Shown here: piece after piece, positions 52,085-56,160 of the stretch | Numbering within the stretch: the first letter of the stretch is position 1 | Layout: each line of letters begins with the position of its first letter | Source: Octopus sinensis | Taxonomy: Eukaryota | NCBI RefSeq assembly: GCF_006345805.1 | Contig: NC_043001.1 | Location: 27,218,001-27,282,000 of the forward strand | Direction: 5' to 3' | Length of the DNA: 64,000 nt | The notes under the pieces: generated by a model | Told to the model about the DNA's origin: nothing | The model's input: the letters and a program-made list of their open reading frames with translations, nothing else | Database searches by the model: none | Translations under genes and position numbers: made by a program

Positions 52085-52368
52085 ATGTATAATAATTGAG
52101 ATGATTTTAATTCAATGCAAGTGGCTTTACTTGAATTTGTAAATATAATTATAACAAGCTTGTCACAATCCTGTAACTATGTAAAATAAATTATTCTGTA
52201 TTATTTGTATGCATGTGTACATGTGTGCATGCATGGATGATTGGTGTAACATTCGATGTATGGAAGCAGTACTCTAATGATGTGCGGTCATTGTATGCCT
52301 GAAGGATTTAGTCAAATGACTGAAGCAAGTAAATGATACAAGTTAAAAGATTTGTTTGACTATTTCAG

Positions 52369-52538
52369 ATATAGTTACAACTACAAAAGCTACCGTTACA
52401 ACTACAAAAGCTACAGTTACAACTACACAAGCTCCAGTTACAACAACTCTTTCCCTGGACTGTCCAGATAATGAAATGTATTGTGCAGCCACAAACCCTG
52501 ACTTTAAAAACCAGTCTCTCAGATACCCTTATTTTTAG
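52369..52538 (+). pseudogene. Truncated duplicate of the LDLa 4 first-half exon: acceptor intact, donor lost at 52496, reads through to TAG (…MYCAATN-PDFKNQSLRYPYF*)
   Basis: 52353-52496 matches 56015-56158 at 143/144 nt, then switches to inverted sequence. Confidence 0.9.
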
Positions 52539-52933
52539 TTGTAAAAAATTATTACCTTTGTACGGTATTTTTCCCATGCTGGCCACTTGATAATATCGAT
52601 ATTCAAATATTGATATTATCCTTATTTATGACTTTATATATATATATAAATCATCATCATCATCATGTCTGAATACACAAGCTATCAATCATTAGCAATA
52701 GAATGAAAATGTGAAACAATTCAAGCATACTTTATTAGTCATAATTACATATCATTAAAGCTTGACCAGAACTGGGAGAAAAGTTTTCTATCATTTGTAA
52801 GTTACCTTCCCAAATAATACATAATAATTGATTTTACAGTTACAGAATTGTGACAACCTTGTTATAATCATATTTATAAATTCAAATATAGCAACTTGCA
52901 TTGAATTAAAATCATTTCAATTATTATACATAC

Positions 52934-53004
52934 CACAATCTTTCTCATCTTCACCATCAGAACAGTCATTTTCTCCATCACATTTCCAACTCAGTGAAAT
53001 GCAG
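52934..53004 (-). pseudogene. Antisense LDLa second-half exon ([23 protein letters not shown]) inside the inverted insert
   Basis: On the minus strand: aacag acceptor, 71-nt open frame, gtatgt donor. Confidence 0.9.
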
Positions 53005-53335
53005 CTGTTATAATGAAATTTTGTTCATATAGAAATCAACTCAAGCAATACTTATGTGTGTATTTTAATTTATGGCTTTTGAGAAGAAAATATTTTTTGT
53101 CTAGGTGATGAAAGAAAATATTTATTCTAGTATGTGATCAAGAGCAAAATTCATTGCATGAGAAGCCAGACACACTTTCACATATAGGTAAGAGAAAGAT
53201 GTGTTCACCTTTCATAAAATTATAACCAGATTTGCTTTTCCTTCCCCTAGTTTATAACGTACTTTAGAAACATATTCATTGCTTATGAATATTAAGATGG
53301 TTAATAGGATGAGAAAGAAAAATGAGTTATCTTAC

Positions 53336-53444
53336 GTGTTTGTGTATGTACAATACATTTCATTAACTTGACAGTCCAGGGAAAGAGATGTTGTAACTGG
53401 AGCTTGTGTAGTTGTAACTAGAGCTCGTGTAGTTGTAACTATAT
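53336..53444 (-). pseudogene. Antisense Thr-rich LDLa first-half exon (IVTTTRALVTTTQAPVTTSLSLDCQVNEMYCTYTNT) inside the inverted insert
   Basis: On the minus strand: tttcag acceptor, 109-nt open frame, gtaaga donor; paralog of 62005-62113. Confidence 0.9.
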
Positions 53445-54306
53445 CTGAAATAGTAAAACAAATCTTTTAACTTTTTATCATTCACTTGCTTCAGTCATTT
53501 GATTAAATCCTTCAAGCAGTGACCCAGTCATGGTGGCATGATATTTGAAGGGCTTAGTCAAATAAATTGGCTCCGGTTCTTATTTTTAAGATCTCATACT
53601 ATTTCTATCAGTTGATTGTGCTGTGCCACTAAATTCCAGGGACATTAACAAACCAACACTGGTTATCAAATGTCAGTGGAGAGGGAATCACAAACACAAA
53701 TTCACATAAACACACATATTATAACGCAATGAGCTTCTACCCACCAAGCAAATCCACTCACAAGGCACTAGTTGGGTTAGGGCTATTGTGGAAGACACTT
53801 GCTCAATGTGTCCTGTAATGGGACTGAACCTAAACCATGTGATAGACATGAAATTGAAAAATGAAAAGAAAAATATTTGTAAACATCACAATATCATTGG
53901 CTTTTGAGAATTGATTGGTTACTTAAAAACTGATACTTATTTTTGCTTGTACTGTGTCAGGTTTCTTTCTTACTGTAAATTATTTCATTAATCAGGAATC
54001 AGTAATCAGCAACATGAAAGTGAGAGTTGCAATTGATCATCATTTTCATTTTAAAGTCCATTTTTTTCTCTTTTGCATGGATCAGACAAGATTCTTAGAG
54101 AGAGATTTTTCCATAGCTTAATGCCCTTCCTGTTGTTAACCCTCACCTTTTTCCAAGCAAGTTTTTAAACTCCTAGTTTGTTAAACAATGAACAGCCCAG
54201 ATATGATTTTGTGACTGACTGCAAGCATGAGACATCACCTGTGATGTTTGCAGTTGGTGAGGATGATGAGAGAAAGAAACTCACTGAGACAAACACATAC
54301 ATGCAA

Positions 54307-54342
<36 letters not shown>

Positions 54343-56030
54343 GTATATGCATACATACAATGACTGCACATCATTAGAGTACTGCTTCCATACATCGAAT
54401 GTTACACCAATAATCTATGCATGCACACATGTACTCATGCATACATACATACAAATTTAGACACATCCATTTATATACATAAATGTGTAATGGTGTCAGT
54501 GTTTGTGTGTGTGTTTGTGTCTGTTTGGGATTACAGTTACTCCTCCCACACCGTCCAACTAATTTTAATGATATTTGGTATATAGGTAGATCACAAGTCC
54601 TCAAGTTCAAATAAAGCCGGAATTTTTCGAAAATTCCATAATGATCAGTTGGCATCGATTTTTGTGAGCTCTATCGAAAATTCCCATAATGATGCTATTT
54701 ATTCTGCAGCTTTTGCACTTTTTCACATGTAAGATTTCAACAAAGTCGAGAGAATAGTCTCTTAGAAAATGCTTATTCAATACAAGTGGGCTTAACAATA
54801 CAGGTGACTTAACCTCAACGTGAAAACATGAGCAATGCTGGGTCCAATATCTAGTACATACATACATATACACATGCTTGCATACATACATACATACATA
54901 CATACATGGTGGCTGCCCCCTCGTTATCGAGTATGGCCATTGCACGAAGCTTAATCAATGTTGTTATCATGCAATGCCTGTGCAAGAAGATATTTTCTAA
55001 AGTGAGGAAAGGCTGTGCACTGAGTCAATCCCACTCACTTAATAACAGTAGCCTTAATCCGAAAAGAAGAACAAGTCAACATCATCGGTAACCACTGAGC
55101 CGCAGATTTTATGTCAGAGTTATCCCAGTTACCTGAGTTACCTTCTCCTGGAAGGATGCCCTAACAAAGGCTAGGAGTCCTTCACTCCCAATGGTTTAAC
55201 CGCGTGATCAGGTATTCAGTCCCATTATTTCTATGTCCCCGCGCATGATACATCCTTAAGACATTTATTGGATGGCCGTTGACTCTCAAGAGTTCCTCCA
55301 CTCTTTGACGGGTTTTGTTTTTCATCCCACAGGGTGTCCAATAAACACCCTCCTCACCAAGCAAGCTTGGTGGGGTGGCCGGTTTAGTCGCTGACAACCC
55401 TGCAACAGGTTGTACTGGGTTACATATTACCTGTAGCACTCGAAAGTGACCTGACATAGATACATACATACATACATACATACATACATACATACATACA
55501 TACATACATACATGGCAGCTGCAACCAAGTTTTGAGTAATGATATTGTTTGAGCTTGATTGTTCTCTTAAACATGAGCAGCACAAAGGTGGAGTTTCAGT
55601 CCTGCCTGAGACTTACACTCATTTGTACAGAGTTGGCAATGATGCGTGCCTATAACAGTAGGTGTTACAATATTGTTTTGATGAACCTTCATGTAATGTT
55701 TTAGTCTGTGTCCTGACACATATCCCTTTACACACTCTCTGCAAAAAGAGATGCTGTATATTGTGTATTTAACAAATTCTCTGTGCATATGGCTTCTTTG
55801 ATGATTTGTAAATCTGTTTTACTGAGGTAAACACACCCTTATTTGTTACATGTTAATCTGGGTTTTCTGCGAAAATTCTCATTGAAAGTCACATGAAGAT
55901 TCTCAGTAACATCTCCCTTGAGTTTTTCCTACATTATATGATTTTATTTTAATTCTCTCCTGCACTACCATGATCCACAATATATATATATATATATATA
56001 ACTAAAAATGAGGGTGTTTGACTATTTCAG

Positions 56031-56160
56031 ATATAGTTACAACTACAAAAGCTACCGTTACAACTACAAAAGCTACAGTTGCAACTACACAAGCTCCAGT
56101 TACAACAACTCTTTCCCTGGACTGTCCAGATAATGAAATGTATTGTGCAGCCACAAACAC
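56031..56160 (+). CDS. Thr-rich linker plus LDLa 4 first half (DIVTTTKATVTTTKATVATTQAPVTTTLSLDCPDNEMYCAATNT), phase 1-2
   Basis: tttcag/gtaaga sites; 130 nt, open frame. Confidence 0.9.

What the first reader, a model, noticed from the sequence alone, without database searches (positions are those of the whole stretch)
52353..56158. 3.5-kb repeat unit inserted inverted and circularly permuted, between 144-bp target duplications
Seen: 52353-52496 and 56015-56158 are direct repeats (143/144). The insert between them begins at the equivalent of 59417 (AAAC microhomology) and ends at the equivalent of 59451 (TGT microhomology), so its two ends are only 33 bp apart in the donor. The donor region is itself bracketed by direct repeats (59017-59243 and ~62560-62785), and the break lies in the loop of a 27-bp inverted repeat (59370-59396 / 59442-59468). 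Inference: one array unit looped out as a circle, was opened at the hairpin and reinserted backwards, or was copied by replication template switching. This would be exon shuffling through a circular intermediate.
Basis: partly seen in the sequence, partly recalled or inferred. Interest (0 to 1): 0.85.

Follow-up and report, generated by a model that had tools for sequence, protein, structure and literature searches.

The report
Inverted repeat-unit copy in octopus gene
In an Octopus sinensis protease gene built from repeated LDL-receptor-type exons, one 3.5-kb repeat period was copied backwards into a neighbouring exon, most likely by a replication template-switching accident at a DNA hairpin. 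The feature looks real, but it is a known kind of structural mutation and adds nothing to the protein.

Summary
52353-52496 and 56015-56158 are 143/144 identical. The 3518 bp between them are the reverse complement of one 3540-bp period of the downstream array (59451..62783, joined through the 227-bp repeat R to 59244..59417), lacking 33 bp. Junctions carry AAAC and TGT microhomology plus longer imperfect homology. One break lies in the loop and the other in the stem of a 27-bp hairpin.

The window is Octopus sinensis, inside a mosaic serine-protease gene whose LDLa modules are each split into two exons. The target duplication is almost a whole exon. Annotated mRNAs use the right-hand copy, so the insert behaves as intron and its two exon copies are antisense. 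This is not exon shuffling.

The inverted copy carries exon variants absent from its present donor but found as forward exons in O. vulgaris and O. bimaculoides. It is therefore real sequence with its own history.

A circle is not needed, because any one-period copy of a tandem array looks circularly permuted. The recombinant R fits a circle, an unequal crossover or a homologous template switch equally well. The 144-bp target duplication and the junction homology favour FoSTeS/MMBIR-type template switching.

This is a known kind of event, of moderate interest.

The parts
51955..52085 (+). (GAA)43 microsatellite, 411 bp upstream of the acceptor break. It abuts the relic of an E2-type 5' splice-site region (tgtataataatt...). 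It is a possible replication-fork barrier; that role is inferred.
   Evidence: role inferred from general knowledge of GAA tracts
52353..52496 (+). Left copy of the target duplication (T_L). It holds 16 nt of intron with the splice acceptor, then exon 52369-52496, cut 2 nt before its GT donor. Read-through gives a stop after 13 codons.
52497..56014 (-). Inverted insert of 3518 bp, one array period minus 33 bp. Read on the minus strand it is donor 59454..62556, then the recombinant R, then 59244..59413.
52667..52893 (-). Recombinant copy of the 227-bp repeat R inside the insert. It is R1/R3-type as far as 52766 and R2-type from 52757 on. This is the joint that creates the permuted order.
52934..53004 (-). 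Antisense copy of the second-half LDLa exon (E2_i), encoding [23 protein letters not shown]. This variant is not present in the forward exons of the window. It is identical to an O. bimaculoides exon.
53336..53444 (-). Antisense copy of the linker/first-half LDLa exon (T_i), ending ...LSLDCQVNEMYCTYTNT. This variant is found as a forward exon in the O. vulgaris orthologue.
56015..56158 (+). Right copy of the target duplication (T_R). The intact exon is 56031-56160, with acceptor and GTAAGA donor. This is the copy used in the annotated O. sinensis mRNAs (VATTQ variant).
56605..56831 (+). R1, a copy of the 227-bp intronic repeat R downstream of exon E2a. It contains a cryptic exon that the O. 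vulgaris annotation uses.
59017..59243 (+). R2, the left bracket of the donor period.
59244..62556 (+). Donor body X, a long intron with microsatellites and SINE-like pieces, plus exons T'' (62005-62113) and E2c (62446-62516). No protein domain was found in its ORFs.
59370..59468 (.). Hairpin-forming inverted repeat, with arms 59370-59396 and 59442-59468 and a 45-nt loop. Both ends of the copied segment map here: 59417 in the loop and 59451-59454 in the right arm. It belongs to a dispersed repeat with another copy at 21528-21718.
62557..62783 (+). R3, the right bracket of the donor period.
56057..58047 (+). First copy of a 5953-bp-period tandem duplication. It matches 62010-64000 at 98.9% and runs off the window end. 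Its left boundary lies inside the T exon. R1-to-R2 is 2412 bp and R2-to-R3 is 3540 bp, which together make one 5953-bp period.

Best explanation
One period of the LDLa exon array of an Octopus sinensis mosaic serine-protease gene was copied, not moved, in inverted orientation into the last codons of a neighbouring 'T' exon. The mechanism I favour is a microhomology-driven replicative template-switching event of the FoSTeS/MMBIR type.

Inferred steps:
1. A nascent strand ending ...GCAGCCACAAAC left the T exon. A (GAA)43 tract lies 411 bp upstream and may have stalled the fork.
2. The strand annealed to the exposed loop of a repeat-derived hairpin in the + strand, 3.3 kb downstream (GCAGTCA-AAAC).
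3. It copied that strand backwards through X1 and R.
4. It continued into exon E2, intron a, exon T and intron X2'. Either these were contiguous in the array as it then stood (a single-module 3.54-kb unit), or the strand made a homologous switch inside R.
5. It stalled 15-18 nt into the stem of the same hairpin one period away.
6. It returned to the original template 144 bp behind its point of departure (TGT / TGTYTGA homology).

Returning upstream produces the 144-bp 'target duplication'. Entering and leaving at the same hairpin in successive periods produces a copy that is one period minus 33 bp long and looks circularly permuted.

Shown: the structure, the junction homologies, the recombinant R, the retained donor, the antisense exons, and the use of the right-hand exon copy in mRNA models.

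Inferred: replication as the process, the role of the hairpin and of the GAA tract, and the order of steps.

Consequence: the insert is intronic and contributes no coding sequence. It does create 3.36-kb inverted arms around four exons.
For: - Structure and coordinates.
- The donor is retained, so this is a copy-number gain.
- Junction microhomology is AAAC and TGT, with longer imperfect homology, P about 0.003 and 0.017.
- The 144-bp direct duplication of the target is what returning upstream on the original template gives.
- Both ends map to one hairpin with fold z = -6.7.
- R in the insert is recombinant.
- The inverted copy is real, older sequence.
  - Its non-exonic divergence from the donor is about 0.65-0.75%.
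  - Its exon differences (11 in 180 bp against 22 in 2919 bp, p = 1e-6) are variants seen as forward exons in O. vulgaris, in O. bimaculoides and in the svh-1-like paralogue.
- An uninterrupted upstream-intron / T exon / intron-a stretch exists in O. bimaculoides.
- O. vulgaris mRNA has consecutive single-module units.
- Inverted insertions with 1-5 bp microhomology, and a duplication at the insertion site, are described for replicative complex insertions: PMC5120786.
Against: - No reads, no second assembly of this locus and no O. vulgaris DNA could be obtained. Neither the reality of the junctions nor the ancestral array order is directly shown.
- Microhomology of 3-4 bp also fits alt-EJ capture of a fragment.
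- In the present assembly the permuted order is not contiguous in the forward array. An extra step is therefore needed: a switch within R, or a lost short unit.
- The hairpin and GAA roles are circumstantial.
Confidence: 0.55

Rival explanations
1. Extrachromosomal intermediate. One 3.54-kb unit was excised as a circle by recombination between R2 and R3, or was released as a unit-length linear fragment by cuts at the hairpins of two adjacent units. It was then either opened at the hairpin and captured at a break in the T exon by microhomology end joining, or used as a template for copying around the circle.
For: - The block order is permuted and the recombinant R has the polarity expected for a circle.
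- Both ends lie at one hairpin, so a single opening explains both, with 33 bp lost.
- In the present forward array the permuted order is not contiguous.
- Order reversal plus microhomology is the published signature of circular-intermediate duplications: PMC7450558.
Against: - The donor lies in a tandem array, where the same permutation arises without a circle.
- The recombinant R is equally predicted by unequal crossover or by a homologous template switch.
- Simple ligation of an opened circle does not produce a 144-bp target duplication.
- The 'copying from a circle' version is itself template switching, differing only in the template.
- No circle can be observed with these data.
Confidence: 0.2
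2. Two-step origin. A longer inverted copy, one 5953-bp period running from 59451 through the next unit to the equivalent of 59417, was inserted first. Later it lost 2412 bp by recombination between its two R copies.
For: - 5953 - 2412 = 3541, which matches the observed unit (spacings).
- The 5953-bp tandem duplication exists at 98.9% identity.
- The recombinant R fits such a deletion.
Against: - It needs an additional event.
- It still requires both ends at the same hairpin one period apart, so it changes nothing about the insertion mechanism.
- It cannot be checked, because the second unit runs off the window.
Confidence: 0.1
3. Assembly artefact of the PacBio-based O. sinensis reference: a chimeric or palindromic read, or a mis-join inside a repeat array.
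For: - The region is a dense tandem array.
- Gene models here are chimeric between two paralogues.
- A 28-kb stretch of the window is 99.4% identical to an unplaced scaffold of the same assembly, so local assembly quality is uncertain.
- No independent sequence spanning the junctions was found.
Against: - The inverted copy is not a duplicate of the donor. It differs by about 1%, and in its exons it carries variants present in other species.
- The junctions are not at shared repeats but at 3-4 bp microhomologies with non-random extended homology.
- There is no N gap in the window.
- Foldback read artefacts give spacer-less palindromes, not a copy 3.4 kb from its donor with a 144-bp direct duplication.
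Confidence: 0.07
4. Transposable-element-mediated capture and insertion.
For: The break region belongs to a dispersed repeat, and the intron holds SINE-like pieces.
Against: - The 144-bp duplication is far outside TE target-site sizes.
- The insert ends are not terminal repeats.
- The ORFs of X have no Pfam domain.
- The insert is simply one period of the host array.
Confidence: 0.02

Closest known systems
FoSTeS/MMBIR complex insertions and inverted duplications (Lee 2007 and Hastings 2009, as cited in PMC5120786; Gu et al. 2016, PMC5120786)
   Same: The donor is retained and the copy is inserted nearby in inverted orientation. Junctions show 3-4 bp microhomology. There is a duplication at the insertion site and more than one template switch.
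   Different: This case is fixed in a reference genome of a cephalopod rather than being a de novo human CNV. The copied length equals one period of a tandem exon array, and both switch points lie on one hairpin. Replication dependence is inferred, not shown.
Duplications through circular DNA intermediates (human segmental duplications, Chicote et al. 2020, PMC7450558; cattle KIT 'colour sidedness' translocations, Durkin et al. 2012, from my own knowledge)
   Same: The block order is reversed (A-B becomes B-A) between donor and copy, with only microhomology at the junctions.
   Different: In those cases the donors are single-copy, so a circle is the simplest source of the permutation. Here the donor is a tandem array bracketed by 227-bp repeats, which gives the permutation without a circle. 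The scale is also 3.5 kb rather than tens to hundreds of kb.
Quasi-palindrome / hairpin-templated template switching (Ripley-type, known from bacteria and yeast; my own knowledge)
   Same: Switch points lie at an imperfect inverted repeat able to fold in single-stranded DNA.
   Different: Classical cases change a few bases within the hairpin. Here the hairpin only marks the entry and exit of a 3.5-kb copy.
Exon-array expansion by unequal crossing-over in LDL-receptor-type genes
   Same: This is the same gene architecture, with repeated LDLa modules and intronic repeats. The same locus shows a 5953-bp tandem duplication whose boundary lies inside the T exon.
   Different: Unequal crossing-over gives direct, in-frame module gain or loss. 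The feature here is inverted and non-coding.

Membership tests
FoSTeS/MMBIR-type replicative complex insertion | Copy-number gain: the donor is retained and the copy lies elsewhere. | tested here: met
   Donor 59017-62783 is intact. The copy lies at 52497-56014.
FoSTeS/MMBIR-type replicative complex insertion | Microhomology or microhomeology at the breakpoint junctions, with no long homology. | tested here: met
   AAAC and TGT microhomology. Extended imperfect homology of 10/12 and 6/7, P = 0.003 and 0.017.
FoSTeS/MMBIR-type replicative complex insertion | Two or more template switches, including a change of strand and a return to the original template. | tested here: met
   Inverted orientation, plus a return 144 bp upstream that gives the direct duplication. 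A possible third switch lies inside R. The structure is compatible; the process itself was not observed.
FoSTeS/MMBIR-type replicative complex insertion | Arises during DNA replication or break-induced replication. | not testable with these tools
   Needs experimental or pedigree data.
Circular-intermediate duplication | Block order in the copy is circularly permuted relative to the donor. | tested here: met
   The copy is 59451..62783 followed by 59244..59417.
Circular-intermediate duplication | The permutation cannot be obtained from a contiguous stretch of the genome, meaning the donor is not tandemly repeated. | tested here: inconclusive
   The order is not contiguous in the forward array of this window. 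But the donor is part of a tandem array bracketed by R repeats. A short unit of 5953 - 2412 = 3541 bp would make the order contiguous. O. vulgaris mRNA shows consecutive single-module units. O. vulgaris DNA was not obtainable.
Circular-intermediate duplication | The circle itself, or its junction, detected independently of the insertion. | not testable with these tools
   The recombinant R is the expected circle junction, but it is equally the product of unequal crossover or template switching.
Transposable element insertion | Short target-site duplication of fixed size, defined termini, and element-encoded or family-typical sequences. | tested here: not met
   The duplication is 144 bp and there are no terminal repeats at the insert ends. 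The ORFs of X have no Pfam domain.
Exon shuffling / module gain | Inserted exons are in sense orientation, flanked by usable splice sites, in phase, and present in mRNA. | tested here: not met
   E2_i and T_i lie on the minus strand. The O. sinensis mRNA models use T_R and skip the insert.
Assembly artefact (foldback or chimeric read) | The copy is identical to the donor, with junctions at shared repeats or a spacer-less palindrome. | tested here: not met
   Divergence is about 1%, with exon variants shared with other species. There is a 3.4-kb spacer, and the junctions are microhomology junctions. Read-level proof was not available.

The most novel reading that the evidence does not exclude
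A unit-length extrachromosomal circle, excised from a tandem exon array by recombination between the 227-bp R repeats, served as the template or substrate for reinsertion into a neighbouring exon. That would be a germline-fixed, base-resolved example of eccDNA remodelling an exon array. A second consequence would be a 3.4-kb intronic inverted repeat bracketing four in-frame exons in an animal with very active RNA editing.
Probability: 0.15. Interest if true: 0.6.

Novelty: new member of a known kind. Interest (0 to 1): 0.3.

Why it matters
It is a clean example, resolved to the base, of how a tandem exon array is remodelled by something other than unequal crossing-over. One whole period was copied backwards, with both breakpoints on a single hairpin.

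It is also a caution. 'Circular permutation' is not evidence for a circle when the donor is a tandem repeat.

Because it is inverted, the copy seems to have escaped the homogenisation that altered the forward exons. It preserves older exon variants and so acts as a useful internal fossil for dating conversion in the array.

Possible consequences follow from general knowledge and were not tested here. The 3.36-kb arms (52667-56021 and 59447-62783) flank exons T_R, E2a, T_b and E2b, which total 360 nt and are in frame. The pre-mRNA could therefore form a long duplex. That duplex would be a substrate for ADAR editing and could drive exon skipping or back-splicing. The arms are also a substrate for inversion of the four exons by recombination.

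Tried and rejected
- **DNA of the same locus elsewhere.** I tried O. vulgaris (P0184, P0287) and the rest of the O. sinensis gene (P0185, P0289, P0291). The product was either not on record or the gene range exceeded 100 kb, so no DNA came back.
- **Independent contigs spanning the left junction.** I searched the protein collection with the 86-aa ORF that crosses the junction and found no candidate.
- **O. bimaculoides locus L001.** It is 53% N and has no homologue of the long intron X. It was useful only for showing an uninterrupted T-exon site.
- **Unplaced O. sinensis scaffold L002.** It turned out to be the svh-1-like paralogue. Its single T/E2 unit is only 80-83% identical, so it cannot serve as an empty-site allele.
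- **Simple inversion of a resident unit.** Rejected, because flipping the insert does not restore a natural array order. T_i sits in the middle and X1/X2' are permuted.
- **Staggered-break inversion model.** Rejected, because that model gives inverted flanking duplications, whereas these are direct.
- **TE origin.** Rejected (and the 144-bp duplication).
- **Phylogeny of the three T-a-E2-R copies.** It is star-like and mosaic. It therefore cannot order the inverted insertion relative to the 5953-bp duplication.
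Full report
**What the sequence is.** The window is animal DNA, with GC about 0.34, many microsatellites and no N.
- Six-frame scans show half-modules of LDL-receptor class A (LDLa) domains on the + strand and one on the - strand.
- A spliced conceptual protein found cephalopod relatives.
- The window's exons then matched Octopus sinensis models XP_036359156/157/159 at 100%. These are LOC115211766/7, named 'atrial natriuretic peptide-converting enzyme-like', from assembly GCA_006345805.1.
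- The gene encodes a mosaic serine protease with SRCR, C-lectin, kringle, an LDLa array, SRCR and trypsin domains (Pfam lists).
- Each LDLa module is split into two exons. The 'T' exon holds the Thr-rich linker plus the first two Cys. The 'E2' exon holds CIxLxWKCDGxxDCxxGEDExxC.
- All the exons I delimited have AG/GT boundaries and compatible phases: E2 50002-50072, T_R 56031-56160, E2a 56494-56564, T_b 57852-57936, E2b 58669-58742, T'' 62005-62113, E2c 62446-62516, T_b' 63805-63889.

**The observation.**
- 52353-52496 equals 56015-56158 at 143/144.
- The 3518 bp between them are the reverse complement of donor 59454..62556, then a copy of the 227-bp repeat R, then 59244..59413.
- The left junction shares AAAC with donor 59414-59417. 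The right junction shares TGT with donor 59451-59453. So 33 bp of a 3540-bp period are absent.
- R occurs three times in direct orientation: R1 56605-56831, R2 59017-59243 and R3 62557-62783.
- The inverted repeat 59370-59396 / 59442-59468 is 25/27 complementary and folds far better than shuffles, z = -6.7.
- One correction: the left break lies in the loop, but the right break lies 15-18 nt inside the right arm.

**What the duplicated target is.** The 144 bp consist of the last 16 nt of an intron, with its acceptor, plus all but the last 2 nt of a T exon.
- The left copy (T_L) has lost its GT donor and reads into a stop after 13 codons.
- The right copy (T_R) is intact. It is the copy used in the annotated O. 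sinensis mRNAs, as shown by its private VATTQ variant.
- The two exon copies inside the insert, E2_i 52934-53004 and T_i 53336-53444, are antisense.
- The insert therefore behaves as intron and adds nothing to the protein. 'Exon shuffling' is not supported.

**Is it real?** I could not obtain reads or a second assembly, but internal evidence argues against an artefact.
- Insert and donor differ at 33 substitutions in about 3.1 kb plus microsatellite length changes.
- The differences are strongly concentrated in the two exons: 11 in 180 bp against 22 in 2919 bp, p = 1e-6. Nearly all of them change the amino acid.
- The variants carried by the inverted copy are real exon variants elsewhere. ...LSLDCQVNEMYCTYTNT is a forward exon in the O. 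vulgaris orthologue. [23 protein letters not shown] is identical to an exon of O. bimaculoides XP_052823984 and nearly identical to one in the svh-1-like paralogue.
- The simplest reading is that the inverted copy preserves older states. The forward exons T'' and E2c were later homogenised with their neighbours. E2a and E2c are now identical, and T'' has acquired the 'D' of T_R.
- In O. bimaculoides the upstream intron, T exon and following intron are contiguous, which corresponds to the uninterrupted site.
- The junction homologies are also non-random.

**The circular permutation.** The joint that creates the permuted order lies inside R. The insert's R is R1/R3-type up to alignment column 142 (52766) and R2-type from column 151 (52757). 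This places a homologous exchange between donor positions 59144 and 59153.
- Three processes predict exactly this hybrid: excision of a circle by R2 x R3 recombination, an unequal crossover giving a 'short' array unit, and a homology-guided template switch during copying.
- The spacings matter. R1-to-R2 is 2412 bp and R2-to-R3 is 3540 bp. Together they make the 5953-bp period of a tandem duplication that also lies here: 56057-58047 = 62010-64000 at 98.9%, running off the window.
- A unit that lost the 2412 bp between R1 and R2 would be 3541 bp long and would contain one module (T, E2) instead of two. Two such units in a row would contain the insert's order contiguously.
- The O. vulgaris mRNA does have consecutive single-module units, T-E2, T-E2, including the QV...TYTNT exon. 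The ancestral array may therefore well have had this arrangement.
- In a tandem array, a circularly permuted copy is not evidence for a circle.

**Mechanism.** Several features point to replicative template switching of the FoSTeS/MMBIR type:
- the retained donor;
- the inverted orientation;
- the microhomology and longer imperfect homology at both junctions (left GCAGCCACAAAC against GCAGTCA-AAAC, right TGTTTGA against TGTCTGA);
- above all, the 144-bp direct duplication of the target.

Leaving the template at the exon's end and returning 144 bp upstream gives the duplication for free. Ligation of an opened circle or fragment into a break does not. [quoted passage not shown]

The near-exact one-period length has a chance probability of about 2%. 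It is explained if the hairpin sets both switch points. The invading end anneals in the single-stranded loop, and the polymerase stalls in the stem of the same element one period later. A (GAA)43 tract 411 bp upstream of the departure point is a plausible fork barrier; that rests on my own knowledge of GAA tracts and was not tested.

The circle reading (PMC7450558) remains possible, at about 0.2. If the circle served only as a template, it differs from my preferred reading in a single step.

**Timing.** These divergences are all similar:
- T_L against T_R: 1 in 144;
- insert against donor: about 0.65-0.75% outside the exons;
- the 5953-bp duplicates: 0.85%.

The events are therefore of similar age and could even be one complex event, but the mosaic pattern prevents ordering them. 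O. sinensis and O. vulgaris are reported to have split about 2.5 My ago (10.1101/2023.05.16.540928). Whether O. vulgaris shares the insertion is unknown.

**Verdict.**
The template-switching alternative is favoured. The circle is unproven and unnecessary. Exon shuffling is rejected.
- The feature is a new instance of a known kind of structural mutation. It has instructive anatomy and some testable side-effects: a long intronic inverted repeat around four in-frame exons.

Noticed in passing
window 51955-52085: A pure (GAA)43 tract directly abuts 'tgtataataatt...', the sequence that follows the 5' splice site of E2 exons. It looks like a dead E2 exon whose GAA-rich 3' end expanded into a microsatellite. 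The intron 52085-52352 looks like a heavily deleted copy of R plus X.
   Followed up: partly
window 21718-22086: A 370-bp near-perfect palindrome (97.8% self-complementary, centre about 21902) that looks like a foldback or MITE-type element. It lies immediately next to the only other copy of the hairpin-region repeat, at 21528-21718.
   Followed up: partly
window 59256-59468 vs 21528-21718: The donor hairpin may itself be the product of an older local inversion or inverted duplication. The 21.5-kb copy is ordered L-A-B with no inverted repeat. The donor is ordered rc(B)-rc(A)-L-A. With only two copies available, the polarity is unknown.
   Followed up: partly
window 52667-56021 and 59447-62783: The insertion creates 3.36-kb inverted arms, 97.7% identical, that flank exons T_R, E2a, T_b and E2b (360 nt, in frame). 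This could form long intronic dsRNA, giving RNA editing, exon skipping or back-splicing. It could also allow recombinational inversion of the four exons. I did not test either.
   Followed up: no
window 62005-62113, 62446-62516 vs 53336-53444, 52934-53004: Differences between the forward exons and their inverted copies are about 8-fold denser than in introns and are almost all nonsynonymous. Forward E2a and E2c are identical to each other. This suggests gene conversion among forward exons, or diversifying selection, with the inverted copy as the unconverted relic.
   Followed up: partly
window 56629-56683 (also 59041-59095, 62581-62635; antisense 52815-52869): The repeat R contains a cryptic exon, AG...GT, encoding GCHNSVTVKSIIMYYLG. 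The O. vulgaris annotation splices it between two E2 exons with no T exon in between. That hints at an irregularity at the corresponding place in O. vulgaris.
   Followed up: partly
window 2637-30976 vs L002 1-28334: The 5' 28 kb of the window is 99.43% identical to the unplaced O. sinensis scaffold VCDQ01000993.1, which carries the svh-1-like paralogue followed by a CDC27-domain (PF09507) gene. Downstream, identity drops to 97%, then 94%, then about 81%. NCBI models LOC115211766 and LOC115211767 overlap and share the array exons. This is either a very recent conversion or duplication between tandem paralogues, or a haplotig or assembly problem.
   Followed up: partly
window 37207-38681 / 38679-40160: A 1.47-kb exact-tandem duplication at 98.9% identity.
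   Followed up: no
window 23154-27881 vs 31674-36973: An older duplication of about 9 kb period, 81-92% identical, carrying the kringle and Thr-rich linker exons. It corresponds to the two kringle-linker blocks of the protein.
   Followed up: no
window 57466-57577, 61616-61726, 63418-63529; inverted 53762-53834: SINE-like segments (GGTTC...CAGGGCATCTTGGGAAAGTGTCTTCCACTATAGCC...TTGTGAGTGGATTT) recur in the introns upstream of T exons. The T-exon acceptor region (tttgactatttcag) resembles part of the hairpin loop (ttttgactgctatttc). I did not classify them.
   Followed up: no
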